64,000 nt of DNA, taken from the IMG/VR virus record IMGVR_UViG_3300017963_000190, positions 1-64,000 of that record, one strand, 5' to 3'. Position numbers and translations under genes: made by a program. The stretch's first letter is position 1, and each line of letters begins with the position of its first letter. This document shows positions 4,338 through 64,000 of this stretch, piece by piece. The notes beneath the pieces are model-generated. The model saw nothing but the letters and a program-made list of their open reading frames with translations. It made no database searches and was not told the origin of the DNA.

Positions 4338-4354
4338 GGTACACAGAATTTTCG

Positions 4355-5718: not shown

Positions 5719-5720
5719 AA

Positions 5721-5993: not shown

Positions 5994-6001
5994 ACGCTCT
6001 C

Positions 6002-6821: not shown

Positions 6822-6830
6822 TTATGCCTC

Positions 6831-9252: not shown

Positions 9253-9785
9253 TATGTCTCCTTTTCTGTACGGAATTCTTTGAATGCTGTTCCAGCTTTG
9301 TCTGCGAACTCAAGGGCCTTTTGCCATATCGTGTAGCTATACTCTTTGAGTTTTTTGTTTTCGTGTCTGAGGCGACGGATCATTGCTGGGAAATCCCCAG
9401 GCGTAATTTGAGGGGTGCCAAGTGCCTCGGCGATTGCTAGCAGCACGTTGTGCTTCTGCACGTTCTGCTCTCGGAGGTAAGGAATCATGAGCGCGTGGTT
9501 AGAGGGGATGTCTTTTACTTGAGCCTCGATGACGTAGTTCCCATCAGTAGGTTTCGTGGTGAACACTTCATGTTCTCCAACGGCTGATTCTCGCAGCCAC
9601 ACAGACATAAGCATCTCCGCTGGACTGGGAGGATTTTCCAACTGCTCTGTAAGGTCCTCCACCTGCTTTTCAAGCCGCTCTATTGTCGCCTCGTGCTCCT
9701 GGACACTCTTGTACAAGACGTCTCTGTCGGCGATGAGCCGTTTTAGTTCCAACTCAATGTTGGTCCGCCCTTCGGAATTATTCAT
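9252..9785 (-). CDS. hypothetical coiled-coil protein
   Basis: coupled ORF. Confidence 0.7.
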   Translation of the reverse strand: MNNSEGRTNIELELKRLIADRDVLYKSVQEHEATIERLEKQVEDLTEQLENPPSPAEMLMSVWLRESAVGEHEVFTTKPTDGNYVIEAQVKDIPSNHALMIPYLREQNVQKHNVLLAIAEALGTPQITPGDFPAMIRRLRHENKKLKEYSYTIWQKALEFADKAGTAFKEFRTEKET

Positions 9786-10543: not shown

Positions 10544-10726
10544 CTATTGCTCCTTCTTGATCCTCTTGTATGCTTTATAGCGAGCGTGGGTCATGTTCCC
10601 ACATTCCGGAAGCAGGTCCACCGACAGCTTCTTCAAGTAGCTTTTCATGGCAGGAGACCACCTACTGACCTCCGCTTCCATGCGCTCGATGCGGCGCCAG
10701 ATGTTACCGTTCTTTTGTTTGGGCAT
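10544..10726 (-). CDS. hypothetical protein
   Basis: 60 aa ORF. Confidence 0.6.
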   Translation of the reverse strand: MPKQKNGNIWRRIERMEAEVSRWSPAMKSYLKKLSVDLLPECGNMTHARYKAYKRIKKEQ

Positions 10727-11024
10727 CTTGTGCCTCTGAGAAAAAGCTGTGCAGCCCCGCTCGCTGCTTTTCTATCTCTTGGGCCTTAGCCACCGCTTCC
10801 GGAAAGAGCTCCCGATAATAATTGCGTTCCGTCTGCACCGCCAGAATATCATCGCCCGAGATGACTAGCTCATCTACGGCTAGATTCGCAGCCGCCACGG
10901 CATTGACTGCGACAAATCCCGCTTTGGGTCTAAGACTCAGTCTCTGGTGGTGCATCTCCAACGCAACCGCGGCGCCGTATGTCGCGATCCAAACAGCTTT
11001 TTCGTTTTCCGTTAGCTTCCGCAT
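10704..11024 (-). CDS. hypothetical protein
   Basis: GAGGA RBS. Confidence 0.7.
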   Translation of the reverse strand: MRKLTENEKAVWIATYGAAVALEMHHQRLSLRPKAGFVAVNAVAAANLAVDELVISGDDILAVQTERNYYRELFPEAVAKAQEIEKQRAGLHSFFSEAQDAQTKER

Positions 11025-11470
11025 TTCTTCCTCTTATCGTCCAGGGACTTGATCCCGATGATGGTCAGGGCCGCAATGCCTACCAGACCCTCCCGGTAAC
11101 CGCGGTTAAATTTGTAGACAAGGTCTGCCACGCGAATGCTGAGCTCTGTGTACCAATCAGGCTCATCCGCGCTCCACCTCTCTTTGTTGTCCTCGACGAT
11201 TTTGATATATGCTTTGACTACATCTCGCCAAATAGGCTCCAGCATCCTTTTTTGATTGACCAGCTGTTGTACAAGTTCGTGAGACTTCCGCGCCTTTCGT
11301 ACCGCATCGACACCCGTCTCAGCCTCCGTAAAAATGTACCAGGATTTATGTTGGCCACAGCTAGTGCAGACATGATCTGTCTCGCGCCTGCGGAACTGCT
11401 GCTCATCGATTTCCTCTGTAGAGATGCCCTCGTCAGGCTTTTTTGTCACATGTACGCGCCAGTATTTCAT
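11012..11470 (-). CDS. hypothetical protein
   Basis: 152 aa ORF. Confidence 0.7.
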   Translation of the reverse strand: MKYWRVHVTKKPDEGISTEEIDEQQFRRRETDHVCTSCGQHKSWYIFTEAETGVDAVRKARKSHELVQQLVNQKRMLEPIWRDVVKAYIKIVEDNKERWSADEPDWYTELSIRVADLVYKFNRGYREGLVGIAALTIIGIKSLDDKRKKCGS

Positions 11471-11483
11471 TTATCACACCCAA

Positions 11484-11642
11484 CTACTCCATCGGATTTT
11501 CGTCGTCATCGTCGTCCAGCACCCATTCCAAAGCTGCTTGTACACCCTGCTCGTAGGTCATGCCATGAAACTTTGAGCGGCCCTCGTCGGTGTAGGGGTA
11601 GGTTTTTTCGAGCTCTTCCTGAATCTCTTTTTGGGATTTCAT
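11484..11642 (-). CDS. small hypothetical protein (not in ORF track)
   Basis: 52 aa MKSQKEIQEE..GMTYEQGVQAALEWVL; AAGGAG RBS; fills gap. Confidence 0.75.
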   Translation of the reverse strand: MKSQKEIQEELEKTYPYTDEGRSKFHGMTYEQGVQAALEWVLDDDDDENPME

Positions 11643-11644
11643 GA

Positions 11645-11857
11645 CTACTCCTTCCCTTCACTTACGACTTCGTTGTCGCCATCGTTCCAGAAAAAGATGC
11701 TGGTTTCTTTATCCTCTCCATCCCACAATACCCACCACCAACGATCTTGCCCGCGCAACTCGCACCGGGTAATGGTGCCAATCTTCTTGGAGGAGGCTAG
11801 GGACCTCACGCGAAATCCCTTAAAATCGGTGGTGTCTGGATAGTCACGTAGTTTCAT
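11645..11857 (-). CDS. hypothetical protein (SH3-like barrel?)
   Basis: GFRVR..GTI..VLWDG pattern. Confidence 0.65.
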   Translation of the reverse strand: MKLRDYPDTTDFKGFRVRSLASSKKIGTITRCELRGQDRWWWVLWDGEDKETSIFFWNDGDNEVVSEGKE

Positions 11858-12231
11858 GCTTCCTCAATTTCCTCTTGCTGATCGAGCTCAATTTCTTTTT
11901 GCACGAATTTGGCAGCGGCGGCTAAAGCGGCAGCGTTCTCCGCAGTCATCTGCACCGCAAATTCACACACGTCGCAGATCAAGTAATAAACTTCTGGTGC
12001 CCATTCGTCAAGCTTGTTCAGCTGGCCGCCTTCGCAGTTTGGGCATTTTAGCCGCAGTGGCTTGCGCACGGTGTATCTGGCAAACCTTGGAAGACGGGCG
12101 CAAGAAGCGCACAGATGCCAGTCTCCTTTGGCGCCAATGGACCACACCGCATCGTTGAGGCACCCAAAATGCCCTGATGTTCCTGCCGCACGGTTGTTCA
12201 CCGGATCCCACTCACAACGTTCTCTAGGCAT
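11854..12231 (-). CDS. hypothetical Zn-finger protein
   Basis: start at MPRERC behind GAGGAGG; multiple CxxC. Confidence 0.7.
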   Translation of the reverse strand: MPRERCEWDPVNNRAAGTSGHFGCLNDAVWSIGAKGDWHLCASCARLPRFARYTVRKPLRLKCPNCEGGQLNKLDEWAPEVYYLICDVCEFAVQMTAENAAALAAAAKFVQKEIELDQQEEIEEA

Positions 12232-12598
12232 CTGTATCCTCCTCAAGCAACGCCTGCAGCATCTCACGCACGTGGGAGCGGAAACCATCCTCGTACGCGC
12301 TGAGCTGCTTTCGGATCTCCGTGCGCTTCCGTTTTGCCATGTGTAGCTCTTCCTCCAAACGGGGAATGTCGTTGTCCAGCTGCTCCAGCAGGGTGAACTT
12401 ATCGCGAACGATGTTGAGGGTTCTCAGTAGAAATGGAATCTTCTCTCCCAACTCTACGCGTAGCGTTGTGATCAACTCATCGAGCTCGGTTTGCAAACTC
12501 CGTAGCGACTCTGAAAGTGGTTCTGGCTCGTAATCCTTATTGCGCTCAAGAGTCACCATGGAATGCTTCGTTGGTGTACTATGCAAAGGTGTTCCCAT
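12224..12598 (-). CDS. coiled-coil hypothetical protein
   Basis: heptad-rich. Confidence 0.7.
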   Translation of the reverse strand: MGTPLHSTPTKHSMVTLERNKDYEPEPLSESLRSLQTELDELITTLRVELGEKIPFLLRTLNIVRDKFTLLEQLDNDIPRLEEELHMAKRKRTEIRKQLSAYEDGFRSHVREMLQALLEEDTDA

Positions 12599-12602
12599 TT
12601 CC

Positions 12603-13184
12603 TTACTCCCCGTTCGTATTCCCGTAGGCGTTGGCTATGTCCCGGTATCGTTTTTCTTCTGTGCGATCGTAAAGCTCGGTGGCGATCGTAACGATTTTTG
12701 GTTTGATCTCCTCCGCCTCTTTAGCAATAGGCCCAGAGAAATTGTCTTGCTCAGGGCCAGGACTAAGCAGCTTGAGCTGACCTTCTAGCTTCTCCATATT
12801 CTCGTGTAAATCTTCAACAGACATACTACGGACGAAAGTTATGGTAAGCCTAGCCGTCGCGCCTGCGTTAAAGATCCTCTCTAAGCCTGCTTTCTTGATT
12901 GCCAGAAGCACCTCAAGGTCAGCCACGGTCAACTCGGTGGCGTCTGTCGAGGAGGCTGCATCTACTCGACGCTTCACGCATTTGAGGCATAAATCGCGCA
13001 TCCAGGCGACGCCTCTTTCATCGTAGCATCTGTCTACACACAGCCAATTGGCTCCGGTCAACACAGCAGCATGCTTTTCCTGCACATTACTACTAGCAAG
13101 TGGATCTTGATGAAAGGCTTCTTCCGAATATAAAGTGTCGCCACAATCATCGCAGGTGAAACAGATCACTTTTTTCCTACTCAT
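12603..13184 (-). CDS. hypothetical Zn-finger protein
   Basis: CDDCG..DLCLKC. Confidence 0.7.
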   Translation of the reverse strand: MSRKKVICFTCDDCGDTLYSEEAFHQDPLASSNVQEKHAAVLTGANWLCVDRCYDERGVAWMRDLCLKCVKRRVDAASSTDATELTVADLEVLLAIKKAGLERIFNAGATARLTITFVRSMSVEDLHENMEKLEGQLKLLSPGPEQDNFSGPIAKEAEEIKPKIVTIATELYDRTEEKRYRDIANAYGNTNGE

Positions 13185-13197
13185 AGGTGTATTTCCC

Positions 13198-13866
13198 TTA
13201 CAGCATGTCGTCTTCGATGATCAACTGCGCCAGGTATTTTTCTTTTTCGCCAGTGCGCAGACCCAAAGCGCAAACGATTTTGTTGATGGAGTTTCTCAAA
13301 GCAATACGCTGACGCTCGGTAGAGGGATCGGAGGCGTCGTGACGCTCCAGCAGCAAACGCATTTGCGTCTTTCGATCCTCTAAGGCATACTCAAGCTCAT
13401 GGTTGCCCAGCAGCTTGGTGTCCAAGTCGGGCCATTCTCCAGAGTTCTCAACCTTCTGGAGCTCTTCCACCTCTCGTCCGTAATCCTCCAGCTCTTCCTC
13501 TAACTCCTCGATTTCACTGTCTCTTTGGATCAGCGCACGCAGTAGGGTTTTTATAATGCTGCCGCGGATTGGCACGTGCAGCTGACGTAGAATTCCCTCA
13601 GCTTCGCGTAGATCACGTTTCAACGAGCTCACGGTGTACGAACCCTCGATGATTTGCCATGGACTAGCGCCCTCTGGTATCTTGCCCGCCTTCACCGCAT
13701 CGTGCCTTTCCAAGGTGGTGTCTACCATGGCACAGTCATAGAGTTCGTAAGCCGCACTAACTTTTTCGATGGCAGTACCCAGTTCCTCGAAAGAACATTT
13801 GAGCAAACAGTCAACAGCTGAGGCCAGGCGCCCAGCACGTTGGAGTAATTCTTTGTCCGTTAGCAT
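13198..13866 (-). CDS. hypothetical protein
   Basis: 222 aa, GGAG RBS. Confidence 0.75.
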   Translation of the reverse strand: MLTDKELLQRAGRLASAVDCLLKCSFEELGTAIEKVSAAYELYDCAMVDTTLERHDAVKAGKIPEGASPWQIIEGSYTVSSLKRDLREAEGILRQLHVPIRGSIIKTLLRALIQRDSEIEELEEELEDYGREVEELQKVENSGEWPDLDTKLLGNHELEYALEDRKTQMRLLLERHDASDPSTERQRIALRNSINKIVCALGLRTGEKEKYLAQLIIEDDML

Positions 13867-13867
13867 T

Positions 13868-14170
13868 TTATTCTCCGTATCTATGGGCCCAGTATTTCCG
13901 GCAACCCAGCCGGCGTTTGTACATCATTTTCTCGTACCGGGCGATCTTAGGAATCGGACCGTCTATGGTAGCAAGTGCGGAGTAGATAAAAGCATTTCGA
14001 TCTTCTATGTGCTCTCGTAGCTTGACGCATTCTTCATTGGACATATCATCTGGCAAAATGGACCACAAGTAGGATATGGCTCTCCTGCAGGTTTCACACA
14101 CCTGCGCATCGTCAAACTCACCAGTGGCTTTTTCTTTTCGACAAGCTACGCACTTCATGGCAAACCTCAC
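13868..14170 (-). CDS. hypothetical Zn-finger protein
   Basis: CVAC..CETC; start uncertain. Confidence 0.65.
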   Translation of the reverse strand: MRFAMKCVACRKEKATGEFDDAQVCETCRRAISYLWSILPDDMSNEECVKLREHIEDRNAFIYSALATIDGPIPKIARYEKMMYKRRLGCRKYWAHRYGE

Positions 14171-14505
14171 ACCAGAATAGAGTCCACCAATCCCTTCATC
14201 TTGATGGTAGCGTCGTTTAAGCGCTTGAGCTGCTCTGGGGACAACTCCTTATCCTCAAACGGACCACCTACCAGCTGCTGCCACAGATACCAAACCAAAA
14301 TGGATTTTTCGATCTGGTCCGCTAGGTCGTTGTGCGTCCGGCAGATGCGTTTCAAATCCAAGGTACCTGCCCCTTCCTTCTCAGCTTGGACTAGCGCTTC
14401 GCGTAGGGCCTGCAGCCTGCGTAGGTCCCCAGTCAAGCGCGTTATGTGGCGAGAGGCCAACTTGTCCGGATCGACCAGGATATCGAAAATGTGTTTGTCG
14501 AGCAT
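14167..14505 (-). CDS. hypothetical protein
   Basis: 112 aa ORF. Confidence 0.65.
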   Translation of the reverse strand: MLDKHIFDILVDPDKLASRHITRLTGDLRRLQALREALVQAEKEGAGTLDLKRICRTHNDLADQIEKSILVWYLWQQLVGGPFEDKELSPEQLKRLNDATIKMKGLVDSILV

Positions 14506-14520
14506 CGTTCTTCTAAGCCC

Positions 14521-14682
14521 CTATTTCTTGCCACTCTGTACTAGATAATGCATCGCTACAGCGAAGAGCTCGGAGAGATTCACCATTTTTGTGGCGTTGT
14601 TATCCTCCAGGTAGCGCAGAACGTCTTTGTCATATTCAAACGTTTCGGCTGGATTCTTCATGGCTTTTTTGGCTTTCGGCAT
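14521..14682 (-). CDS. small hypothetical protein (not in ORF track)
   Basis: 53 aa MPKAKKAMKNP..; GGAGG RBS. Confidence 0.65.
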   Translation of the reverse strand: MPKAKKAMKNPAETFEYDKDVLRYLEDNNATKMVNLSELFAVAMHYLVQSGKK

Positions 14683-14684
14683 TT

Positions 14685-14837
14685 CTAAAGTCCTCCCATT
14701 TGATTATCGGGGTAGTAAGGTGACAGCGCATATACCGCACAAGAGGTAGCTATTCCTAACCATGCGCTCCCTGTGTAGATACCCACACCGACTCCCGACA
14801 TAACGACCGGGACCAGCATAATGATCGCATGTGCCAT
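14685..14837 (-). CDS. small membrane protein
   Basis: MAHAIIMLV..; GAGGAGG RBS. Confidence 0.65.
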   Translation of the reverse strand: MAHAIIMLVPVVMSGVGVGIYTGSAWLGIATSCAVYALSPYYPDNQMGGL

Positions 14838-14839
14838 TT

Positions 14840-15844
14840 TTAATCCTCCTCGTGCGCAGTCATATAAATGAATTGCTGCGATCTGCAGCAACCCTCACAG
14901 TAGCCCCACACAAAAGGTCCGTGGCGCTCTGAGCGGCTGTACTTAATGTTGGCGCACCCGATACACTGGTAAGTGTAGGTGAAATCTGGGTTTTGTGGCA
15001 AAGGCTTGTGATGGGTTTCCACAAGCTCCTCGTCGTCGCAGCGCTCGCAATGAAGCAGCGTACCACCAGGTTTCAGCTCCTTCGCCGTTATTTGAGCAGA
15101 TTTACACTTGGAACACTCAGCGAGGTACACAAGGTTATTGGCGGTGCTCTCTTTCTTTTCCACGGGTTTAGGAGGCATGATTCCCAGCTCGGGGTTGAGC
15201 TCCCGGAACTTGTCCAGCAGTTGCTGCAGGTGCAAAGCTTTTCCTTCCAAGGTCCTCACCGAAGCTTCCGCGTGCTCTGCCGCCAGCTTCTTCTGGTTGG
15301 CTATCTCTTTTTGCTTTTTGATTTCCCCTTTGATCCGCTGCGCTTCTCCCTTGTACTCCCAGTAGAGCTCGCGGTAAGACTTCTCATCATCCCCCACCGG
15401 TGCAAGTACAGCATCCTCGGTCAAGGTAACTGGTACTCGACCATCTTCATTGGGCTTCCCAACTTCCGCTTCCACATCAACGCTTGGCTGAAAAGAAGTC
15501 AACCCTGTAGGCGGAGGCTCCGAAGACACGGTTCCTGTTCCAACAGGAGATCGGTAGTCCTCTTCCCAGGGGTCCTCTACTTCTTCCTCATTGCACTCGC
15601 GAAGGACGTCCACAAACGTTCCCACCTCTTGCTGCAGCTTTTCCGATTTCTCGATGAGGAACTTAAGCTTATTATTGGTCTGCGCCAGCAGGGTCAGCTT
15701 CCGCGAGAGAACCTGGAGGATCATGCTCCCGAAATCACCAGGACGCTCTTGATTAAATTCCACGATACCAGCAATGTCCAAGCCGCAGGATTCGCAATAG
15801 GCCAGCACGTTCTCAGGGACGGGCGTTTTATTGGTTTGCTGCAT
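14840..15844 (-). CDS. coiled-coil/Zn-ribbon protein (GLDx paralogue family)
   Basis: N-terminal CGLDI helix, four C-terminal CxxC. Confidence 0.75.
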   Translation of the reverse strand: MQQTNKTPVPENVLAYCESCGLDIAGIVEFNQERPGDFGSMILQVLSRKLTLLAQTNNKLKFLIEKSEKLQQEVGTFVDVLRECNEEEVEDPWEEDYRSPVGTGTVSSEPPPTGLTSFQPSVDVEAEVGKPNEDGRVPVTLTEDAVLAPVGDDEKSYRELYWEYKGEAQRIKGEIKKQKEIANQKKLAAEHAEASVRTLEGKALHLQQLLDKFRELNPELGIMPPKPVEKKESTANNLVYLAECSKCKSAQITAKELKPGGTLLHCERCDDEELVETHHKPLPQNPDFTYTYQCIGCANIKYSRSERHGPFVWGYCEGCCRSQQFIYMTAHEED

Positions 15845-15858
15845 ACTGGATACACCTT

Positions 15859-16203
15859 TTAATTCGAAGGGGGATCAGGATCATCGCTACTACCTGCGTC
15901 GTACATGTAGCAGGCACGCATGATTGCTTCCGTTTCTCTCGCGTCACTAAGAAAAGCCCTACACTTTTCCAGCTTAGCGGAGGTTTCCTCTGTAGCTTCT
16001 TTCTCTAGTTGGGCTTGGAGAGCTCGCTCCTCGTCTTCCGATTTCTTGATGAGTTCTTGCAGGAAGCGTAGCCGTTTGCCTAGCTGCTCCCTTAGCATTA
16101 AGGTGGCAGCATCAGGGTCGTGTTCTAGCTTATGAAGGAACTCCTGTAGATCGAGGCCGCACGCCACCACCATTCCAACAAGCTCTTTTGCGAAGACATC
16201 CAT
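15859..16203 (-). CDS. hypothetical protein (GLDx paralogue family)
   Basis: CGLDL N-terminus. Confidence 0.75.
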   Translation of the reverse strand: MDVFAKELVGMVVACGLDLQEFLHKLEHDPDAATLMLREQLGKRLRFLQELIKKSEDEERALQAQLEKEATEETSAKLEKCRAFLSDARETEAIMRACYMYDAGSSDDPDPPSN

Positions 16204-16217
16204 TTAGAAAATCCTTT

Positions 16218-17483
16218 TCATTTAACGTGCACAATAATAGGCCCGTACACTACTAGATCCCCATTCTCTGCGCCGCCCTCACGCACTATGGATTCCGTAG
16301 CGCCAGCTAACAACTCAGTTTTGTTGTCCACGACTCGCATTCCCACCCATACTTCAGACGGAAGAGCGCCCGATCGGTAAGAGTGCACTTCCTTTTCAAG
16401 TGTATCGTGCGCTTTTACAGCCGCTTTTACCGCGGTGTTCAGACGCCACTCTAGAGGAGAGTTGGGATCTTTTGGCTCCCATTTGTGTAACACAGGTATC
16501 ATATCGCCGATGAGGTCTAATAGAGCTACTGACCGATCTTCCGTGGCCGACCGTTGTTCCTGTGCAATGCGTAGGCTCCGTTTAAGACACCTATTCTTTT
16601 CCTGAAGAGCACGTATCTCTGCTTTTTGCTTTACCAGTTTTTTGGCTGCAGACTCCTTGTCGCCAAAGACCAAGTCGCTGGATTGTAGATGGAGAATCTT
16701 ATCCTTCACGTTTTTAGGAAGACTTCGGAAGTATTGGGCGCGAGGATTAAACACGGCGGCTAGATCGTAAAGCAGCGCCTCAGCAGCATCTCTATGCTCT
16801 TCCTCTCTCCGGAGGTCTTCCTCTAGCTCTTCTACGCATTTGGCTTCTTGAGGAGATAATGCAGCACGTTCGGTTTCGACTTCATCAAGAGTCTCTGCGA
16901 TCCACCATAGCTCATACTCTAAGCGCCGCTCAGCTACACCTACTCGTACACCCATTTTTGTTATACAACGCCCCAGCTCTTTTACCGCCTCTTGTCTATC
17001 CTCGGGCAACCCTGGAATATTGGTTGTTAGCCAGCCAAGCGGACCGACCACGTTGTAGGGGTCCTCCCAATCGGCCTCCTCATCCCAATCTGGATTGCAT
17101 TTGGGGCAACAGATGCTAAATGTGAACTCGTGCTCTTCTCCCCCCGTGTCCCAAGAAAAGGTGTTTTCGGGTACCGTACCACATTCTTTGCAGGGCACAA
17201 AGCGGCACAAAGCGCAAAGAGCTCTATATTCTGCGTACTCGTTTTCGTAGGAAAGCGCATCTTTATCTAGCCCTTCTTGCCGCACCACCCCTATCTTGCG
17301 CAGGTGCTCTGCCAAAGTAGCCTGCTCCTTTTGAATGGATTCGGCCGCTTTAGACAACGAGCTAAGGTTATCCAGTAAGCGTTCGCTAAGCTCTTCCTGG
17401 CTTAAACCAGCTACGTCTTTCGTGAAGAAGGTTCGGAGCTGCACGTTGCGCAAACTACGAAGTCGGATATTACGGTCTCCCAT
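16218..17483 (-). CDS. coiled-coil/Zn-finger protein
   Basis: 421 aa. Confidence 0.75.
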   Translation of the reverse strand: MGDRNIRLRSLRNVQLRTFFTKDVAGLSQEELSERLLDNLSSLSKAAESIQKEQATLAEHLRKIGVVRQEGLDKDALSYENEYAEYRALCALCRFVPCKECGTVPENTFSWDTGGEEHEFTFSICCPKCNPDWDEEADWEDPYNVVGPLGWLTTNIPGLPEDRQEAVKELGRCITKMGVRVGVAERRLEYELWWIAETLDEVETERAALSPQEAKCVEELEEDLRREEEHRDAAEALLYDLAAVFNPRAQYFRSLPKNVKDKILHLQSSDLVFGDKESAAKKLVKQKAEIRALQEKNRCLKRSLRIAQEQRSATEDRSVALLDLIGDMIPVLHKWEPKDPNSPLEWRLNTAVKAAVKAHDTLEKEVHSYRSGALPSEVWVGMRVVDNKTELLAGATESIVREGGAENGDLVVYGPIIVHVK

Positions 17484-17496
17484 CTAAAAATCCTTT

Positions 17497-18228
17497 TCAT
17501 TTTGGCGCAAGAGAAAAACGAGACCCTTCCACAGGGAGATGGAGAGTACCCACACCTTCAAGGTTACAGCTCACACACGTAGCGTAGATACCCTTAGAGG
17601 TATTGTGCGAAGCAGCTACGGTAGAACCACACCCTACACAGCGGTAGACAAAGAGATGGTCCTTATCCACAGGGATAAAGGAATGGACACACGTGTTCTC
17701 ACATTGTCTACACTTCCACCCAGTCACCCGACCGATCAGACGTTCTCTATCCTCGGCATCCATAAGGATGTTGGACGTTACGCCACCACATTCCTCACAC
17801 ATGAGGACGTCCACTAGCCTAGGTGCCTCCTCTTCGTCATCGTCCTCTTCATCTTCACCATCTATTAGCCGCTCTCTATTCTCTAGCTCCCTCTCCTCCT
17901 CAGCATTGAGATCGATGCCCCACTCACATAAGAGTTGTTTGTCCCTACTGGTGATGTGGGTACGCTGGCACCCTTGATGACAGTCCTTGAGGATCTGTAA
18001 GAAGCAGTTGAGGTCCTCTCGGCTTTTATCCAGAGCTTTTTTCCTGTGCTCCAAATCCTCTTCTCGGTATTTGATACTCTCCATTTCTGAGGAAATCATT
18101 TTCAGAAGGTAGAGGAGTAGATACTCAGGAGCTCGGTAGGTGGACTCGGTGAAACTGCGAAGGTCTAGCCCCGAGGCTTTTACCGCGTCGAGTATTTCGT
18201 CTGATATTTTATCTGATGGTCGCGTCAT
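17497..18228 (-). CDS. Zn-ribbon protein (GLDx paralogue family)
   Basis: SGLDL N-terminus, four CxxC. Confidence 0.75.
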   Translation of the reverse strand: MTRPSDKISDEILDAVKASGLDLRSFTESTYRAPEYLLLYLLKMISSEMESIKYREEDLEHRKKALDKSREDLNCFLQILKDCHQGCQRTHITSRDKQLLCEWGIDLNAEEERELENRERLIDGEDEEDDDEEEAPRLVDVLMCEECGGVTSNILMDAEDRERLIGRVTGWKCRQCENTCVHSFIPVDKDHLFVYRCVGCGSTVAASHNTSKGIYATCVSCNLEGVGTLHLPVEGSRFSLAPK

Positions 18229-18231
18229 TAT

Positions 18232-18693
18232 TTACCGAGCCTCCTTTACCCTGGCTGGCTTCCAATTAAACCACAGGTCCGTGATGAGCTCAGGTTGCCG
18301 TACCCAATCGTCTAGTAGCTCTAAGGGGAACCTGAGGTGACCAAGCGTCCTGACGTAGGGTATCTGCCTGGCATTGACCTTCCGCCTGATGGTCTTCTCT
18401 GAGACCCCGAATTTCTCGGCTACCTGCCCGATGGTGACGTAGCGATAGCGGTACTTGGCTCTTGTTGGCATCCCTAGTAGATGGAGGACCTCGTTGAGAT
18501 GATCCGTTAGTCGGTCCCGTTGGGAGACCAGGTCATCTATTTGGTTCTCTAGCTTGTCCTCTTCTTCCTGTAATATGCGAGCGCATAATGCTAGACCTCT
18601 CGTGGACCTTTGCTGTAGCTGTTGCTGGAGGATGTTCGTCCTAATCCCCAGCTTGTCTAATACGTCCAAGGTCTCTTTTGAGAGAAGCATCAC
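18232..18693 (-). CDS. excisionase/MerR-type HTH DNA-binding protein
   Basis: TIGQVAEKFGVSEKTIRR..IPYVR..LRF. Confidence 0.8.
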   Translation of the reverse strand: MMLLSKETLDVLDKLGIRTNILQQQLQQRSTRGLALCARILQEEEDKLENQIDDLVSQRDRLTDHLNEVLHLLGMPTRAKYRYRYVTIGQVAEKFGVSEKTIRRKVNARQIPYVRTLGHLRFPLELLDDWVRQPELITDLWFNWKPARVKEAR

Positions 18694-18765
18694 TTGCCGA
18701 CTCCTTGCTGCGTCTCGAATAATTCTTTGGTCAGCCCATCGAGTAATTGGGTTTCATTGTGGCTA

Positions 18766-18794
18766 ATATTAAGCGGCCTGTATGACGATGTCAA
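18766..18794 (-). promoter_or_regulatory. sigma70-type promoter heading the 18.7-kb operon
   Basis: TTGACA-N17-TAATAT. Confidence 0.7.
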
Positions 18795-19243
18795 GCACAC
18801 ATAGAAAATACTTCCACGCCGCGCTGCTGAACGTCGCTTATTGGTCCCGTGAATTTCTGGAGTCTGTACTCCTGGTGATCTGCACCTGGGATAGTGCCTG
18901 GTTAATTGAATCGATGTAATGTCGCTGGAAGTATTTTACAAGATTAGGTGTGGATTCACTACAACTGATTTTTGCTTTCTTGGTGAGTGAAGTGGTGAAG
19001 GGATTACGTGTGATGTTGTCGTATATGGTGTGAGTCCCGCTGAAGTTGTGCCTCAGAAACCCGGTTCCGCTCTATACAAAATCGGCTTTTTGCGCAGGAA
19101 TGATGTGGGCTGCTGGAGCTCGAACCCTTACAGCACGTAGGTGAACGGTCCACACAAAGCTGGAGTCGGGATGATGGATGAGATTACTTGGTCCTGAGGT
19201 GCCTTGGGTTCCACCGAAGCTCTGTCATTATGCCCCAGAGCCT

Positions 19244-28751: not shown

Positions 28752-29318
28752 CTATTCCTGGGCTTCTGTGGATCCGATAATCATGGGATCCGTTGGATCG
28801 GGTGCGCCCAGCTCGATTACCTCGAAACCAACGTGATCCTTAAAGGCTTCGTGGCGCGCGTGGTAGCGATCCACGGATTCGCGGGAGCATTCACACTTGC
28901 GCCGGGATCCCAAGCGGCCACAAGGGCAGCTGGGGGCGCCTGCGATAAGATAAAAGTCTGTGTGATCTTCCTTGTCCCCTGCCCGCAGGATCCGCTTGTT
29001 CACGAAACCGTGGCCCACCATTTCGAGCAAGGGCCGTCTGAACTCCGGCATATCGTCAAGGTACAACGTGCCCCCGTTGGCCAGGTGGACTTCGCCGGGG
29101 TATTTCTTGCTCCCCAGCATGCCCGGATTGCTCACGGTATGGTGAGGGGCGCGCAGTGGTCCACCCCTTAGCATGGCCAGCATACGGCCAAAGCGGAGCT
29201 TACCACAGCCCACAGGGCCAACTAGCAGGATAGGCTTGCCTGCGGCCATGGCATTAAGCGCGGCCGTGAGAACGCGCACAGAGACCTTGAGACCGTTGAT
29301 TGTGGTAGTAGGGGCCAT
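28752..29318 (-). CDS. Mg-chelatase-related (ComM/YifB-like) AAA+ ATPase fragment
   Basis: GPVGCGK, PLRAPHHT, PGEVHLANGGTLYLDD.PEF, CPCG. Confidence 0.85.
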   Translation of the reverse strand: MAPTTTINGLKVSVRVLTAALNAMAAGKPILLVGPVGCGKLRFGRMLAMLRGGPLRAPHHTVSNPGMLGSKKYPGEVHLANGGTLYLDDMPEFRRPLLEMVGHGFVNKRILRAGDKEDHTDFYLIAGAPSCPCGRLGSRRKCECSRESVDRYHARHEAFKDHVGFEVIELGAPDPTDPMIIGSTEAQE

Positions 29319-40286: not shown

Positions 40287-41177
40287 TTAGGCTGCTAACT
40301 CAGTTGCCAGCTCCGCTTCTGTTGTGGCTACCTCCCGCAGGTCCCGCACCCCGAAAAATTCCTTGGCCTTTTTGCGCACGGTAGCGTCTACGTATTGGAC
40401 CGCTTGTCGACTGCAGCCGGTGAGATCTGCTACCTCTTGAAGGGTGAGGGGATCATCGGAAAGTACCCGTAGGTCTAACACGATCCGTTGCTTTGGGGAA
40501 AGGGTCTGGGCGAACTCGTTGAACATCTGGCGCAGCTCTGATTTCCATTCCACGCGGCGGTAGACTTGCTCAGGGGTGGGGATGTTGCCTTGTAGAGTAT
40601 CGCCAAAGGTGACTCTATGCTCTCGCCTGGAGTAGGATGCGGTAGATACCTCATTTTTACCGCGCAATCGAACAAGCATAGCCTTGACGGTGGGGATGTC
40701 TACGTCAAGCGCTTTGGCTAAGCGCTCCGGGGTTGCTTCGATACCCTGGGCTTCTAGGGCAGCTTGCGTCTTAGACAGACCCCACAGACATTTACGCTGG
40801 CCTCCCGTGGTACCCGTGCGCACAATAAACAGGTTATCTCGAAAGGCTTCGAGCACGCGAGCCCTAACCCACTGCATAGCGTATGTGGTAAACCGCGTGC
40901 CCTTGTCTGTGTCGAATCTGTCGATGGATTCCATGAGGCCCACGTTGCCCGCTTGGATCAGGTCTAGCAGGGTTTCCTTGCAGCCGTTGCTATACCGCTT
41001 GGCTACCTTCACGACCAGGCGTAGGTTGTGCTCCGCGAGCCGTTGCCTAGCGCGTTGGTTGCCGTCGGTGGCCCGCTCTAGCAGCGCCCTTTCATCCTCG
41101 GCGGATAGCAAGGGGAATTTGCCCGCGGCTTGCATGTAAAAATTGAGAGTATCGAGATCGGTTGAAGTATTGGCCAT
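40287..41177 (-). CDS. RNA polymerase sigma factor, sigma-70 family (RpoH/sigma32-like)
   Basis: PLLSAEDE, HNLRLVVKVA, DLIQAGNVGL, RFTTYA.QW, RpoH-box-like IVRTGTTGGQRK, TLQEVA region 4. Confidence 0.92.
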   Translation of the reverse strand: MANTSTDLDTLNFYMQAAGKFPLLSAEDERALLERATDGNQRARQRLAEHNLRLVVKVAKRYSNGCKETLLDLIQAGNVGLMESIDRFDTDKGTRFTTYAMQWVRARVLEAFRDNLFIVRTGTTGGQRKCLWGLSKTQAALEAQGIEATPERLAKALDVDIPTVKAMLVRLRGKNEVSTASYSRREHRVTFGDTLQGNIPTPEQVYRRVEWKSELRQMFNEFAQTLSPKQRIVLDLRVLSDDPLTLQEVADLTGCSRQAVQYVDATVRKKAKEFFGVRDLREVATTEAELATELAA

Positions 41178-53009: not shown

Positions 53010-53447
53010 TCAGCCTCCTAGCTCTTGTGGGGAACCAATGTCCGCATTCGCGCCTGCCGCAACGAGATTCCTGTGCATGATTTGGAGCTGCGCGTTCGAC
53101 AGGTGTATCATAGATGAGATCTCGGCGATGGAATCCACCACCCGTATCGGTGCTGAGTCCACCAGTAGCTTGGCTTCCTTTAAACCAAGCCCTGTTGCTT
53201 CCCGCATCACCTTGATCACCTGGATCTTTTTGTCACCAACGCGACGCAGAAGGATCTCCAGTTTCATCTCTGCGAGACGAGCACGTTGTGTAATCGGGGC
53301 AGTTGCCGCCTCCACCACCATCTTTGCGATCCCATCTACAGCACTCTGCCCGCTGTCCTGCTGGATATGGTGCATGACTAGCATGACTTCGGGCATGGTC
53401 ATGGCTTGTAGATCTCTGGCCAACCGCCGTGCTCTAGCTCTGTTCAT
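53010..53447 (-). CDS. ribosomal protein bL12 (L7/L12) C-terminal domain protein
   Basis: GDKKIQVIKVMREATGLGLKEAKLLVDSAP..L..AGA. Confidence 0.85.
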   Translation of the reverse strand: MNRARARRLARDLQAMTMPEVMLVMHHIQQDSGQSAVDGIAKMVVEAATAPITQRARLAEMKLEILLRRVGDKKIQVIKVMREATGLGLKEAKLLVDSAPIRVVDSIAEISSMIHLSNAQLQIMHRNLVAAGANADIGSPQELGG

Positions 53448-61031: not shown

Positions 61032-61238
61032 TTACATCCCGAAGAATGTGCTGAGGTGGTCATCCATGCGTCGCCTGAGCTCAGCCTCCATCGTTGGGAT
61101 CGTCTCTGGTGAGAATGAAACGACACCAGTCTGAGACAGATCCTGCATCGTTCTGATCGTGTCCACGAGCTCCGCATCAGTCATCGTTTTGAAGTAGCCC
61201 CGTACTGTCGTTGCATATTTAATTTGATCGTGATTCAT
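61032..61238 (-). CDS. hypothetical protein
   Basis: ACGGAG RBS. Confidence 0.7.
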   Translation of the reverse strand: MNHDQIKYATTVRGYFKTMTDAELVDTIRTMQDLSQTGVVSFSPETIPTMEAELRRRMDDHLSTFFGM

Positions 61239-61264
61239 CGTAATTTCTCCGTTGTCAGTTAAAA

Positions 61265-61390
61265 TGGGAGCGCCGGGAGTCGAACCCAGATCAGAAGAGC
61301 TTGATGAACGGAGGTAAATCGATAACCAAGCCGCGAAGCTCCACGTGTCGGTCGAGGAGTGGTGCTTTTCCGATAGACCACCTCGCTCCT
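61265..61390 (-). ncRNA. tRNA-like RNA (126 nt) with anti-RBS loop
   Basis: acceptor AGGAGCG/CGCTCCC-A, T-arm CTGGG-TTCGACT-CCCGG, D-like arm, own promoter at 61397-61425; no canonical anticodon loop. Confidence 0.7.
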
Positions 61391-61421
61391 GGGCAAAGGA
61401 TAAGCAGATGATACTACAGCG

Positions 61422-61883
61422 TCAAGCTCCGACAGCTGCTTTCTTTTTCCTAGGAGCCTTTTTGGTTTTCTTTGGGGCCGCTTTCTTCTTGGGAGCCTTG
61501 GCAGTTTTACTAGATGCTTTCTTCTTGGGAGCCTTACTAGACTTAGCAGACTTAGCAGACTTTGCAGTTCTCTTCACCGTCCTCTTGGGTTTCGCGAAGG
61601 CGAGCTCCCACGGAGCTCGCGTGGGGAAGGCGTTGTAGATATACTTGGCGGTCTCCTCGTCGATCTGCTTGGTGAGCACGTGGCCACCAGGGCACGAGGC
61701 TACAAGGAAGTACATGGAGGTATTATGTCGCCGTCGCAGCCAAAAAACAGAGTGCATTCCTGCATCTGCTGCTAGGTCCATCCACTTCTTGTTGTCCGCT
61801 CCTACCCAAGGCTTTCCGTCAAGGGGGATGTGCACCTTGCTGGTGGGAACCTCTACATCCGGATTGGATTTTTTTGATGGCAC
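61422..61883 (-). CDS. protein with histone H1-like K/A-rich tail
   Basis: repeated APKKKA/SAK C-terminus. Confidence 0.75.
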   Translation of the reverse strand: MPSKKSNPDVEVPTSKVHIPLDGKPWVGADNKKWMDLAADAGMHSVFWLRRRHNTSMYFLVASCPGGHVLTKQIDEETAKYIYNAFPTRAPWELAFAKPKRTVKRTAKSAKSAKSSKAPKKKASSKTAKAPKKKAAPKKTKKAPRKKKAAVGA

Positions 61884-63287: not shown

Positions 63288-64000
63288 TTACGATACAGCA
63301 AGATGTGTTTTAGGTGTGATGATGAAGGGCGCAGCCTCGAACTCCCCTGGAGCCATCACTGCCAGCTGGGCGTTGACACGCTCTCTCAGCGTTGCCGCGG
63401 TCTGCGCCAGCCAGCGGACATCTTTCTGCTCGTAACGGTCGTGGGGGTAAAGTAGCTTGGCCAGCGCGGACGTGGTCTTCTCGATAGCAACCACATCCCG
63501 TCGGGTGGCCGCTGCAGGCATCTGCAGATCATTTATGAGATGTCGCCGGCTCCGGCCGCGTAGCTTCCCCAGCACCTGGCCAAGGTAGTCCACGATCAAC
63601 CCGTAACCGGAGCTAAGAGACCGTGGAGTGATCTTGGGGATCTCCCACCCAGGCAGGTAAGCGTGGATCCTGTCGAGAAGTGCGGTGTCCTGCACAACAG
63701 TTGGGAGCTCCTCGAAAAGATGTTTGTAGCGTGAAGCCGGGGAGCTCCCTTCGACTTCCAGGTTACCTGTCATGACCAGCGAGGCATCTGAGGAGTAGGT
63801 CTTTCCTCCGCGAGCAAATTGCCCACTCTCCAGGTAGTCCTTCAGCATGGAGATTGTCGTCACGCTATCGAATTGTGTATCCGCAATCTCATCAAGCACC
63901 ACTACCTTGAAGCTTCCGACAATGCCCAGCTCGCCGCTGGACACGTTGGCGAAAAGGGATGCGGCGGACACGTTGGCACCAGACGCAGTATAGACGCTAG
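63288..64000 (-). CDS. brxL: BrxL-like ATPase (BREX Lon-related), 5'-truncated by window, lacking the C-terminal Lon domain
   Basis: A.LF.N..G.VG..VVLDEIA, LKDYLESG.FARG, DTALLDRIHAYLPGWEIPK, YG.IVDY. Confidence 0.85.
   Translation of the reverse strand, partial: SVYTASGANVSAASLFANVSSGELGIVGSFKVVVLDEIADTQFDSVTTISMLKDYLESGQFARGGKTYSSDASLVMTGNLEVEGSSPASRYKHLFEELPTVVQDTALLDRIHAYLPGWEIPKITPRSLSSGYGLIVDYLGQVLGKLRGRSRRHLINDLQMPAAATRRDVVAIEKTTSALAKLLYPHDRYEQKDVRWLAQTAATLRERVNAQLAVMAPGEFEAAPFIITPKTHLAVS

What the first reader, a model, noticed from the sequence alone, without database searches (positions are those of the whole stretch)
61265..61425. Enlarged tRNA-like RNA displaying a 16S-3'-tail mimic
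Seen on the minus strand: AGGAGCG pairs with CGCTCCC (A1:C72 mismatch) with discriminator A; D-like arm GTGGT/ACCAC with a GG-containing loop; stem CTCCTCG/CGTGGAG with a 7-nt loop ACCGACA lacking U33; extra arm GCTTGGT/ATCAAGC whose loop contains GATTTACCTCCGTT; canonical T-arm TTCGACT. The predicted +1 of TTGACG-N17-TATCCT falls on nucleotide 1. The loop resembles the 16S rRNA 3' end GAUCACCUCCUU (established). At 126 nt it is too long for a tRNA and too short for tmRNA. Inference: a tRNA scaffold, stable and perhaps CCA-added or EF-Tu/ribosome-bound, repurposed to present an antisense guide.
Basis: partly seen in the sequence, partly recalled or inferred. Interest (0 to 1): 0.85.

Follow-up and report, generated by a model that had tools for sequence, protein, structure and literature searches.

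The report
tRNA-shaped phage RNA with anti-RBS loop
A giant phage encodes a small, previously undescribed RNA whose top half looks like a tRNA and whose open loop is complementary to the unusual ribosome-binding motif of the phage's own genes, so it probably controls which messages the ribosome can start on.

Summary
The 126-nt element is real (window 61390 to 61265, minus strand). ARAGORN and Rfam find nothing. Four more distinct homologues sit at the same place in related jumbo-phage contigs, between a basic-tailed protein gene and a ~65-aa ORF. A covariance model built from one homologue finds the others at E 1e-8 to 1e-40, and 12 of 35 base pairs show compensatory changes (0 of 500 shuffles).

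The conserved fold is not a cloverleaf. An invariant 6-bp acceptor stem and a T arm sit on a long helix (P2). P2 replaces the D and anticodon arms, as in the tRNA-like domain of tmRNA, and carries two hairpins. One hairpin has an open 14-19-nt loop that always contains CUCCGUU.

That loop is complementary over 9-12 nt to the extended ribosome-binding motif of the phage's own genes: (G)AAC(C)GGAGGTAA here, GAAACGGAGAAA in a relative. The motif includes a C before GGAG that the canonical 16S tail cannot pair with. Loop and motif change together between phages.

Best reading: a sigma70-promoter-driven, tRNA-scaffolded RNA that pairs with phage RBSs in trans, and with its own downstream ORF's RBS in cis. 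It probably controls initiation by occlusion. The direction of the effect, the 3' end, CCA addition and ribosome binding are untested.

The parts
61397..61425 (-). Sigma70-type promoter TTGACG-N17-TATCCT. The -35 hexamer overlaps the stop codon of the upstream gene, and +1 falls at or next to RNA nucleotide 1.
   Evidence: An equivalent promoter stands in front of all four homologues.
61265..61390 (-). The RNA, 126 nt. RNA position p corresponds to window coordinate 61391 - p.
   Evidence: 77.8 bits, E = 4e-18 with the family model R2.
61384..61389 (-). Acceptor stem, 5' strand GGAGCG (RNA 2-7). Nucleotide 1 (A) is unpaired here (A.C); in the relatives it is A.A or A:U.
   Evidence: helix 1: 6 pairs, invariant in all five sequences.
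61267..61272 (-). Acceptor stem, 3' strand CGCUCC (RNA 119-124), followed by C and A. No CCA is encoded.
61375..61383 (-). Single-stranded joiner AGGUGGUCU (RNA 8-16). It takes the place of the D arm. Its sequence and length vary among homologues.
61368..61374 (-). P2 helix, 5' strand AUCGGAA (RNA 17-23), pairs with RNA 95-101.
   Evidence: helix 2: 3 pairs with compensatory changes. P2 is worth 4-10 kcal/mol in the four relatives.
61290..61296 (-). P2 helix, 3' strand UUCUGAU (RNA 95-101), directly abutting the T arm.
61336..61367 (-). P3 (AAGC / GCUU, RNA 24-27 with 52-55) plus hairpin 1, whose loop carries the family-invariant CCGACA (RNA 40-45, window 61351-61346).
   Evidence: helices 3 and 4; loop unpaired probability 0.64-0.99. 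The function of this loop is unknown. No enriched complementary targets were found.
61298..61332 (-). Hairpin 2: an 8-bp stem (RNA 59-66 with 86-93) and a 19-nt open loop (RNA 67-85).
   Evidence: helix 5: 4 pairs with compensatory changes; the stem is completely re-written in L134.
61306..61317 (-). Anti-RBS tract UUACCUCCGUUC (RNA 74-85). The invariant core CUCCGUU is RNA 78-84. The tract is a perfect complement of GAACGGAGGTAA.
61273..61289 (-). T arm CUGGG-UUCGACU-CCCGG (RNA 102-118).
   Evidence: helix 6 (one compensatory pair). U54, G57 and A58 of the loop are invariant. Position 55 is G in two relatives.
61032..61253 (-). Co-transcribed downstream cistron: RBS AACGGAG at 61253-61247 and a 68-aa ORF at 61238-61032. 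There is no terminator between the RNA and the ORF.
   Evidence: The ORF family is conserved downstream of every homologue.
61422..61883 (-). Upstream gene: a 153-aa protein with a conserved beta-sheet/helix domain and a lysine-rich disordered tail. It is the syntenic anchor used to find the homologues.

Best explanation
This is a phage-encoded small RNA, transcribed as the 5' part of a short mRNA from a sigma70-type promoter, and it has two functional halves.

The first half is a tRNA-like top: an invariant 6-bp acceptor stem stacked on a T arm, joined by a single-stranded linker to a long helix P2. The layout matches the tRNA-like domain of tmRNA. I infer that this half gives the RNA a defined, stable, processable shape.

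The second half sits on P2 and consists of two hairpins. The open loop of one hairpin carries an extended anti-Shine-Dalgarno tract (UUACCUCCGUUC here). That tract base-pairs with the extended ribosome-binding motif shared by a large block of the phage's own genes, (G)AAC(C)GGAGGTAA. Those genes have the same promoter type as the RNA. The tract also pairs, more weakly, with the RBS of the ORF immediately downstream on the same transcript.

The most likely consequence is occlusion of those RBSs as the stable RNA accumulates. That would be a global, RNA-based brake or timer on translation of that gene class, analogous in logic to T4 RegA and in chemistry to the C-rich-loop sRNAs of Firmicutes.

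Shown here: the conserved fold, the open loop, the complementarity, and its co-variation with each phage's motif.
Inferred: that pairing happens in vivo, that it represses rather than helps, and that the tRNA-like half serves stability or processing.
For: - Family and fold. Five distinct homologues were found. Of the cells, 96.5% are paired. 12 of 35 pairs have double changes, against 2.9 in shuffles and 0-2 in slid controls. The same architecture is the unconstrained MFE in three relatives (L133, L132, L134); L004's unconstrained MFE replaces the T arm, and the architecture is its best fold once acceptor and T arm are enforced. P2 is worth 4-10 kcal/mol there.
- Loop accessibility. The unpaired probability of CUCCGUU is 0.59-0.91.
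- RBS motif. Conditioning only on GGAG plus ATG plus an ORF of at least 60 aa, the window's consensus is aAcCGGAGGtAa and the relative's is GAAACGGAGAAA. C stands at -1 in 54% and 58% of genes, where most other phage loci have A.
- Reciprocal specificity. Window genes pair better with the window loop (-11.6 kcal/mol) than with a canonical 16S tail (-10.0, p = 3e-5) or the relative's loop (-9.95). The relative's genes prefer their own loop (-12.7 vs -10.6 and -11.0; p = 0.008 and 0.005). Unrelated phages prefer the 16S tail.
- Permutation test. With the CUCC core fixed, the real flanks beat 490/500 and 492/500 shuffled flanks.
- A third phage. L134 has loop complement GAAACGGAGGUAAG and genes with (G)AAACGGAGG.
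- Trans rather than cis only. In the window, about 20 genes at 44-62 kb carry perfect 11-12-nt matches (-18 to -20 kcal/mol). The cis RBS ranks 37th of 90.
- Co-expression. The matched blocks (20-64 kb) are those with dense TTGACA-N16-TATACT promoters, the RNA's own type. The 0-19 kb block has neither feature.
- Precedent. Unpaired C-rich loops that bind SD sequences and block initiation are described in PMC2790875. T4 RegA represses about 30 early mRNAs at their initiation regions (PMC3014915).
Against: - No expression, end-mapping or binding data exist, and the phage is uncultured.
- Only five sequences are known. Only two phages have enough genes for RBS statistics, and the third has about 7 genes.
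- The structural alignment was fitted to the model (caveat).
- A repressor matched to most of a phage's own genes is harder to rationalise than an activator, because each gene would individually gain by escaping it.
- TAA after GGAGG may partly reflect stop codons of upstream genes rather than pairing.
- Close relatives without the RNA at this locus (L121, L123) still use some AACGGAGG sites.
- One MAG has a 16S end reading CCUCCGUUC, so a host with a matching 16S tail is not excluded.
- The invariant acceptor sequence and the invariant CCGACA loop are not explained by this model.
Confidence: 0.45

Rival explanations
1. Purely cis-acting leader. The structured 5' region regulates only the small ORF that follows it, by sequestering that ORF's Shine-Dalgarno sequence with the loop. 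The tRNA-like fold would be the sensor or processing site, for example for RNase P/Z or a tRNA-binding protein. The match to other genes is a by-product of all genes sharing one motif.
For: - RNA and small ORF are adjacent, co-oriented and without a terminator in all five phages.
- Every loop can pair with its own downstream RBS over 7-11 bp.
- In the window, additional loop nucleotides can pair with the spacer and start codon (-13.8 kcal/mol).
- In L134 the cis RBS is the best partner.
Against: - In the window and in L004 the cis site is a mediocre partner (rank 37 of 90 and 18 of 27), while the loop matches the genome-wide consensus perfectly.
- L121 keeps the small ORF directly behind the upstream gene with no leader at all, so the ORF does not need the leader.
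- This model does not explain why the phage-wide motif deviates from the canonical SD exactly where the loop does.
Confidence: 0.2
2. Positive adaptor. The RNA, alone or with a phage protein, associates with the ribosome or the 30S platform and supplies a private anti-SD in trans. Phage messages carrying the extended motif are then preferentially initiated, giving a natural orthogonal SD/anti-SD pair.
For: - Genome-wide matching of RBS flanks to the loop is most easily maintained if each gene benefits from pairing.
- The loop reads like a 16S tail with one inserted or substituted G, and the motif reads like a canonical extended SD with the compensating C.
- The tRNA-like top half is a shape that ribosomes and translation factors recognise.
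- The phage and its relatives also encode a bL12-like protein.
Against: - No known mechanism lets a free RNA substitute for the tethered 16S tail.
- The stack of P2, P3 and hairpin 1 is longer than a tRNA anticodon-D stack, so ordinary A/P/E-site binding is unlikely (inference).
- A 10-12-bp duplex with a free RNA would by itself block 30S binding.
- There is no aminoacylation identity (G3:C70, variable discriminator) and no encoded CCA.
Confidence: 0.12
3. True 16S-tail decoy. The host's 16S 3' end really reads ...CCUCCGUU. The phage RBS motif simply follows the host, and the loop copies the host tail to titrate something that binds or cuts that tail, or SD sequences in general.
For: - The window loop shares ACCUCCGUUC with the 16S end of one Pyrinomonadaceae MAG.
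Against: - Only 2 of 185,579 species genomes have G after CUCC in a recognisable 16S end, and one of those is a low-coverage contaminant-like contig.
- Three of five loops have UCUCC, which no known 16S tail has.
- The two phages' motifs differ from each other in step with their loops.
- Within one phage, a whole gene block uses ordinary AGGAG.
- There is no similarity to 16S beyond the core.
Confidence: 0.08
4. Miniature tmRNA-like or chargeable tRNA-like molecule that enters the ribosome as a tRNA mimic. Alternatively, a decaying tRNA gene with no function.
For: The architecture is acceptor / T arm / P2 with a single-stranded D-loop substitute, as in the tmRNA tRNA-like domain. The neighbouring gene encodes a small protein with a basic tail, superficially like SmpB.
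Against: - ARAGORN and Rfam find no tmRNA or tRNA.
- Position 3:70 is G:C, not G:U, in all five.
- There is no tag reading frame and no pseudoknots.
- The neighbour has no sequence or fold similarity to SmpB.
- Decay is excluded by compensatory changes, the conserved promoter and the invariant loops.
Confidence: 0.04

Closest known systems
tRNA-like domain of tmRNA (SsrA)
   Same: The 5' and 3' ends form the acceptor stem. A T arm directly abuts a long helix (P2) that replaces the anticodon and D arms. A single-stranded stretch replaces the D arm. The functional payload is carried inside P2.
   Different: It is 122-127 nt instead of ~350. It has no G3:U70, no pseudoknots, no tag ORF and no encoded CCA, and ARAGORN and Rfam do not detect it. 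The payload is an antisense loop, not a message.
C-rich-loop sRNAs that target Shine-Dalgarno sequences (S. aureus RsaE/RoxS, RNAIII hairpins)
   Same: An unpaired pyrimidine-rich motif in a hairpin loop is complementary to the SD of many mRNAs. Those sRNAs prevent formation of the initiation complex (PMC2790875).
   Different: Those are cellular, terminator-ended sRNAs with a 4-nt UCCC core. This one is phage-encoded, tRNA-scaffolded and lacks a terminator. It carries a 9-12-nt tract matched to a phage-specific extended motif.
Phage T4 RegA (and RegB) control of early-gene initiation regions
   Same: A phage-encoded, early-expressed factor that recognises the translation initiation regions of a few dozen of the phage's own mRNAs, including its own (PMC3014915).
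   Different: RegA and RegB are proteins. Here the recognising agent is an RNA acting by base pairing.
Engineered tRNA scaffolds for recombinant RNA (Ponchon and Dardel method)
   Same: A foreign RNA hairpin is inserted in place of the anticodon arm, so that the chimera is folded, processed and protected like a tRNA (PMC3753655).
   Different: That is a laboratory design keeping a full D arm. This is a natural molecule without a conserved D arm.
Engineered orthogonal ribosome-mRNA pairs (altered anti-SD in 16S with matching SD; own knowledge, not tested here)
   Same: A compensating change on both sides of the SD/anti-SD duplex creates a private pairing code.
   Different: In those systems the altered anti-SD is part of 16S rRNA. 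Here it sits on a separate small RNA, and no ribosome link is shown.
mascRNA / viral tRNA-like structures
   Same: tRNA-like acceptor/T-arm modules embedded in longer transcripts. The only weak Rfam similarity was to mascRNA-menRNA (14.3 bits against a threshold of 42.5, E = 7.4).
   Different: They are eukaryotic or plant-viral. There is no sequence relationship and no antisense loop.

Membership tests
tRNA | Recognised as a cloverleaf by ARAGORN or the Rfam tRNA model | tested here: not met
   0 genes found in the window and in loci L002-L004 and L121-L123. There is no RF00005 match even at E <= 10 or E <= 5 on L132/L133.
tRNA | 7-nt anticodon loop with U33 and purine 37 | tested here: not met
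   The window loop is ACCGACA (C33, C37). In the relatives the loop is the 6-nt CCGACA.
tRNA | Conserved D arm | tested here: not met
   A D-like hairpin is competitive only in the window copy (-38.6 vs -37.6 kcal/mol). Blocking P2 costs 4-10 kcal/mol in the other four, and no common D hairpin appears.
tRNA | Acceptor stem stacked on a 5-bp T arm with a T loop | tested here: met
   Helices 1 and 6 are 100% paired. The T loop is U-N-N-G-A-N-N with U54, G57 and A58 invariant. Position 55 is G in L132 and L134.
tRNA | 3' CCA and aminoacylation | not testable with these tools
   CCA is not encoded in any of the five. The discriminator varies (A, C, C, U, C).
tmRNA | tRNA-like domain: acceptor + T arm + P2 helix, D arm replaced by a single strand | tested here: met
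tmRNA | G3:U70 alanine identity pair | tested here: not met
   The pair at columns 3/138 is G:C in 5 of 5.
tmRNA | Tag reading frame with pseudoknots; detection by ARAGORN or Rfam | tested here: not met
   No detection. At 122-127 nt the interior is fully accounted for by two hairpins.
tmRNA | SmpB partner | tested here: not met
   The conserved neighbouring basic-tailed protein has no Pfam, PDB-sequence or fold match to SmpB. The rest of the 260-kb genome was not available.
Anti-SD (C-rich loop) regulatory sRNAs | Unpaired pyrimidine-rich motif complementary to SD sequences | tested here: met
   CUCCGUU lies in a 14-19-nt loop with unpaired probability 0.59-0.91.
Anti-SD (C-rich loop) regulatory sRNAs | Predicted pairing with the RBS of many target mRNAs | tested here: met
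Anti-SD (C-rich loop) regulatory sRNAs | Blocks formation of the initiation complex | not testable with these tools
   Needs toeprinting or reporter assays.
Anti-SD (C-rich loop) regulatory sRNAs | Independent transcription unit ending in an intrinsic terminator | tested here: not met
   No terminator-like site lies between the RNA and the next ORF. The 3' flanks of the homologues are unstructured.
Cis-acting SD-sequestering leader | Anti-SD upstream on the same transcript, complementary to the gene's own SD | tested here: met
   7-11 bp in all five.
Cis-acting SD-sequestering leader | Its own SD is the preferred partner | tested here: not met
   Rank 37 of 90 in the window and 18 of 27 in L004. 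It is the best partner only in L134 (n = 9).

The most novel reading that the evidence does not exclude
The RNA is the anti-SD half of a natural, phage-private SD/anti-SD code. Working on or with the ribosome, it recruits messages carrying the C-containing extended motif. The phage thereby redirects initiation to its own genes without changing the host's 16S rRNA.
Probability: 0.12. Interest if true: 0.97.

Novelty: new variant of a known kind. Interest (0 to 1): 0.8.

Why it matters
How large phages bias the host's translation apparatus towards their own messages is an open question. So far it has been approached mainly through phage-encoded ribosomal proteins such as bS21 (PMC7162821, PMC9723584).

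This finding is a compact and experimentally tractable candidate for that bias. It is a 126-nt RNA with a conserved fold. Its single-stranded loop and the phage's own ribosome-binding motif carry matching departures from the universal SD/anti-SD pair.

Whichever direction the effect takes, it would be a new kind of phage gene-expression control, and a natural counterpart of two laboratory inventions: tRNA scaffolds and orthogonal SD/anti-SD pairs. The possible directions are a global RNA brake on an expression class, a self-regulating leader, or a private initiation code.

The finding also adds an undescribed RNA family that standard annotation tools (ARAGORN, Rfam) miss.

Tried and rejected
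- Standard detectors. ARAGORN and Rfam (gathering and E-value modes) gave nothing.
- INPHARED phage records. No DNA match to the region.
- DNA pattern scans built from the first two sequences. Patterns requiring GGTTCGA, CAAGC, ATCGG or the acceptor found only the two already known contigs in IMG/VR and in JGI metagenomes, plus noise. The reason became clear later: two relatives have UGYGA T loops and a rewritten hairpin-2 stem.
- Later scans with family-wide invariants also added nothing in IMG/VR.
- Synteny through the AAA ATPase gene gave relatives without the RNA (L121-L129).
- What worked was a profile search with the protein encoded just upstream.
- Two further likely homologues are listed without DNA and could not be read: in GCA_024449895.1 there is a 164-nt gap after the P0122 gene, and in SRR11241200 a 211-nt gap.
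- MAFFT plus RNAalifold on the five sequences misaligned the 5' third and gave a poor consensus. The model-guided alignment was used instead, with its stated bias.
- Rejected ideas:
  - att-site or tRNA fragment: the 5' acceptor strand, promoter and covariation are all present.
  - Intron-containing tRNA: no D or anticodon arm.
  - Homology to the 16S 3' domain beyond the core: local alignment scores fall within shuffles.
  - Targets complementary to the CCGACA loop: no enrichment.
  - SmpB-like neighbour.
  - Y RNA / YrlA: no Rfam match, and the ends form the acceptor stem rather than a Ro-binding stem.
Full report
**1. What is there.**
The window is the first 64 kb of a 260-kb IMG/VR jumbo-phage contig (IMGVR_UViG_3300017963_000190). 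Nearly all genes lie on the minus strand.

All the listed pairings, loops and the promoter are present. ARAGORN finds no tRNA or tmRNA in the window. Rfam finds nothing at gathering thresholds. At E <= 10 Rfam gives only a 14-bit similarity of the T arm and acceptor to mascRNA. On its own the sequence does not fold better than shuffles (z = 0.0), so the case rests on comparison with relatives.

**2. Homologues.**
nhmmer found one relative in a 350-kb contig whose AAA ATPase is 53% identical (L004:2851-2977). Pattern scans of IMG/VR and of JGI metagenomes returned only these two phages.

ATPase relatives from the large protein collection gave contigs with the same gene order but no RNA (L121, L123, L124, L127).

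The gene just upstream of the RNA encodes a small protein with a conserved domain and a lysine-rich tail. A profile search with that family led to three more contigs (L132, L133, L134 = L135). Each has a 170-200-nt gap behind that gene, followed by a ~65-aa ORF.

A covariance model built from L004 alone scores these gaps at E = 5e-40, 2e-29 and 8e-19, and scores the window RNA at 9e-9. A five-sequence model finds no further true member in about 0.94 Mb of held loci or among later IMG/VR candidates. The family is therefore real but rare, with five distinct sequences.

All five have a sigma70-type promoter placing +1 at the first A of AGGAGCG. None has a terminator before the small ORF. The small ORF is itself a conserved family. 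In L121 it follows the upstream gene directly, with no RNA between them.

**3. Structure.**
On the model-guided alignment:
- 96.5% of cells form standard pairs.
- 12 of 35 pairs show changes on both sides, against 2.9 +/- 1.5 in shuffles (0 of 500 reach 12) and 0-2 in slid controls.

The alignment was fitted to the structure, which inflates such counts. However, the same architecture is the unconstrained minimum-energy fold of three relatives (L133, L132, L134); L004 adopts it once acceptor and T arm are enforced, its unconstrained MFE lacking the T arm.

The fold has these parts:
- A 6-bp acceptor stem, GGAGCG / CGCUCC, invariant in all five.
- A 7-12-nt single strand.
- Helix P2 (7-8 bp), whose 3' strand abuts the T arm.
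- P3 plus hairpin 1, with the invariant loop CCGACA.
- Hairpin 2, with a 14-19-nt open loop.
- The T arm.

P2 changes AU to CC with the matching change on the partner strand in L134. The hairpin-2 stem is completely rewritten there.

There the D-like hairpin and P2 are within 1 kcal/mol of each other. In the other four, blocking P2 costs 4-10 kcal/mol and no common D hairpin appears.

The topology is that of the tRNA-like domain of tmRNA, but several tmRNA features are missing:
- Position 3:70 is G:C.
- There is no tag frame.
- No CCA is encoded, and the discriminator varies.
- The neighbouring basic-tailed protein is not SmpB-like by sequence or by predicted fold (pLDDT 79; best PDB match E = 0.13).

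**4. The loop and the phage's ribosome-binding sites.**
The hairpin-2 loop always contains CUCCGUU. It is predicted to be open (unpaired probability 0.59-0.91).

I took every GGAG followed at 4-11 nt by an ATG that opens an ORF of at least 60 codons. This selection does not constrain the flanks. The resulting consensus motifs are:
- Window: aAcCGGAGGtAa (n = 90).
- L004 phage: GAAACGGAGAAA (n = 34).

C stands immediately before GGAG in 54% and 58% of sites. Most of the other phage loci held have A there (only L006, L013 and L019 also favour C, on 8-12 sites each), as expected for pairing with the canonical tail CCUCCUUU.

The loop complements are:
- Window: GAACGGAGGUAAA.
- L004: CGAAACGGAGAUG.
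- L134: GAAACGGAGGUAAG.

Each matches its own phage's motif over 9-12 nt. The match includes the C (paired by the loop's invariant G). It also includes the position after GGAG, which is G in the window and L134 (loop C) and mostly A in L004 (loop U).

Quantitatively:

| Gene set | Own loop | Canonical 16S tail | Other phage's loop |
|---|---|---|---|
| Window genes | -11.6 | -10.0 (p = 3e-5) | -9.95 (p = 6e-6) |
| L004-phage genes | -12.7 | -10.6 (p = 0.008) | -11.0 (p = 0.005) |

Values are mean duplex energies in kcal/mol. Unrelated phages bind the 16S tail best. With the CUCC core fixed, the true flanks beat 98% of shuffled flanks in both phages.

**5. A regulon-like pattern.**
Within the window the motif comes in blocks:
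- 44-62 kb, which includes the RNA: (G)AACGGAGGTAA, perfect 11-12-nt matches at -18 to -20 kcal/mol.
- 20-41 kb: AACCGGAGGTAA, 9-nt matches.
- 0-19 kb: ordinary AGGAG-type sites.

The first two blocks also have a TTGACA-N16-TATACT-type promoter, the RNA's own type, in front of almost every gene. The third block has almost none. So the RNA is co-expressed with its best predicted partners.

The RBS of the ORF just downstream can also pair with the loop, over 7 bp plus a second short helix (-13.8 kcal/mol). But it ranks only 37th of 90 in the window and 18th of 27 in L004. It is first of nine in L134.

**6. The host-16S rival.**
The motif would need no special explanation if the hosts' 16S tails read CCUCCG. 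A scan of one genome for each of 185,579 species looked for 16S ends with a recognisable helix 45 followed by GGAUNNNCUCCG. It found two. One is a Pyrinomonadaceae MAG reading GGAUCACCUCCGUUCU. The other is a 0.56x-coverage E. coli-like contig. I could not run the control count of canonical ends; that they are near-universal rests on established knowledge.

Several observations argue against this rival:
- The rarity of the variant tail.
- UCUCC in three of the five loops.
- The differences between the two phages' motifs.
- The ordinary block within the same phage.

It is not excluded.

**7. Mechanism.**
- Shown: a conserved, promoter-driven, structured RNA; a tRNA-like top half; an accessible loop; and complementarity to a phage-specific extended RBS that co-varies between phages.
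- Inferred: the loop pairs with those RBSs in vivo.

I consider trans pairing with occlusion of the RBS the most likely outcome (0.45). Unpaired C-rich loops that bind SD sequences and prevent initiation-complex formation are an established mechanism (PMC2790875). A phage factor that shuts down translation of its own co-expressed early genes has a precedent in T4 RegA (PMC3014915). A tRNA-shaped scaffold would let the RNA outlive the mRNAs, which is the principle of engineered tRNA scaffolds (PMC3753655).

The rivals and their confidences are:
- Cis-only leader: 0.20.
- Ribosome-linked positive adaptor: 0.12. This is attractive because genome-wide matching is easiest to maintain if each gene benefits from pairing.
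- True 16S-tail decoy: 0.08.
- tmRNA-like molecule or dead tRNA: 0.04.

The invariant acceptor sequence and the invariant CCGACA loop are unexplained by all of these. They suggest a protein partner. No enriched complementary targets for CCGACA were found.

**8. Distribution.**
The RNA is present in the window phage, the L004 phage, L132, L133 and L134. It is probably present in a contig of GCA_024449895.1, which has a 164-nt gap at the right place but no DNA available.

It is absent at the syntenic site in L121, L123 and L195. L121 and L123 are closer to the window phage by ATPase identity (65%) than L004 is. In L121 and L123 the C(-1) frequency is 20-34%.

L123 carries, behind an equivalent promoter, the string AGGAG-AACAA-CGCUCCCC. 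This looks like the two acceptor strands left after an internal deletion, but it is only suggestive.

**9. Novelty and literature.**
Full-text searches for phage-encoded tRNA-like RNAs with anti-SD function found nothing relevant. I class the finding as a new variant of a known kind: an SD-targeting regulatory RNA on a tRNA-like scaffold, matched to a private extended RBS. There is a minority chance that it is something categorically new, a trans-supplied anti-SD.

Noticed in passing
window 53010-53447 (-): A 145-aa protein with a ribosomal protein L7/L12 C-terminal domain (Pfam E = 1.6e-14). Similar genes lie downstream of the AAA ATPase in relatives L122 and L123. It is a second sign that this phage group touches the translation apparatus.
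   Followed up: partly
window 20000-64000 (-) versus 1-19000: Sigma70-like promoters (TTGACA-N16-TATACT at 42-62 kb; TTGACA-N16-TATNTT at 20-38 kb) stand before almost every gene. They are nearly absent from 0-19 kb. The RBS flavour changes at the same borders, and GC content rises from about 0.51 to about 0.56 near 20 kb.
   Followed up: partly
window 63288-63971 (-), running off the window end: A BrxL-like Lon-type ATPase (Pfam E = 8e-66). The gene order BrxL-like, small genes, basic-tailed protein, [RNA], small ORF, ParB-like, AAA ATPase is conserved in L121, L123 and L134. It therefore looks like a phage gene rather than part of a host BREX island.
   Followed up: partly
window 40287-41177 (-); 1053-1586 (-); 28752-29318 (-): A phage sigma-70 family factor, a GmrSD_N-domain protein, and a Mg-chelatase/ChlI-type ATPase fragment.
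   Followed up: no
window 61422-61883 (-) and family A6: The protein encoded just upstream of the RNA has a confidently predicted four-strand sheet plus helix domain (pLDDT > 90) and a disordered lysine-rich tail. It has no Pfam or PDB relative; there are weak WGR-domain-like fold hits only. It is a candidate nucleic-acid binder, possibly the RNA's partner.
   Followed up: partly
L123:3680-3740: Behind a TTGACA-N17-TATACT promoter, at the place where the RNA gene would be, the sequence reads AGGAG-AACAA-CGCTCCCC. This may be a deletion scar that kept only the two acceptor strands.
   Followed up: no
L055:5816-5949(-), L058:508-642(-), L065:4921-5046(+), L061:611-739(+), L062:1881-2009(+), L071:9508-9640(-), L054:387-519(+): Unrelated phage contigs carry other 125-140-nt RNAs with a GGAGCG/CGCTCC acceptor stem and a T arm but large, different interiors. 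None is recognised by ARAGORN or Rfam. L055 contains CUGAUCACCU twice, which resembles the 16S 3' end. Enlarged tRNA-like RNAs may be a wider phage phenomenon.
   Followed up: partly
L068:7547-7665 and 7672-7788 (-); L057:1723-1855 (-): tRNA genes with inserts of about 45-60 nt. The Rfam tRNA model matches across the insert, but ARAGORN in bacterial mode misses them.
   Followed up: no
L072, L078, L096, L104, L105, L120 (soil metagenome contigs): A conserved ~117-nt element that starts GGAGCGGTGGGATAAGGAGATCGGCGCTCC and ends GGTTCGATCCTCACCGCTCC recurs in several samples and has no Rfam match.
   Followed up: partly
L130:660-690: The 16S rRNA gene end of a Pyrinomonadaceae MAG reads GGATCACCTCCGTTCT instead of the canonical ...CCTCCTTTCT. 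It is the only credible case among 185,579 species genomes scanned.
   Followed up: no
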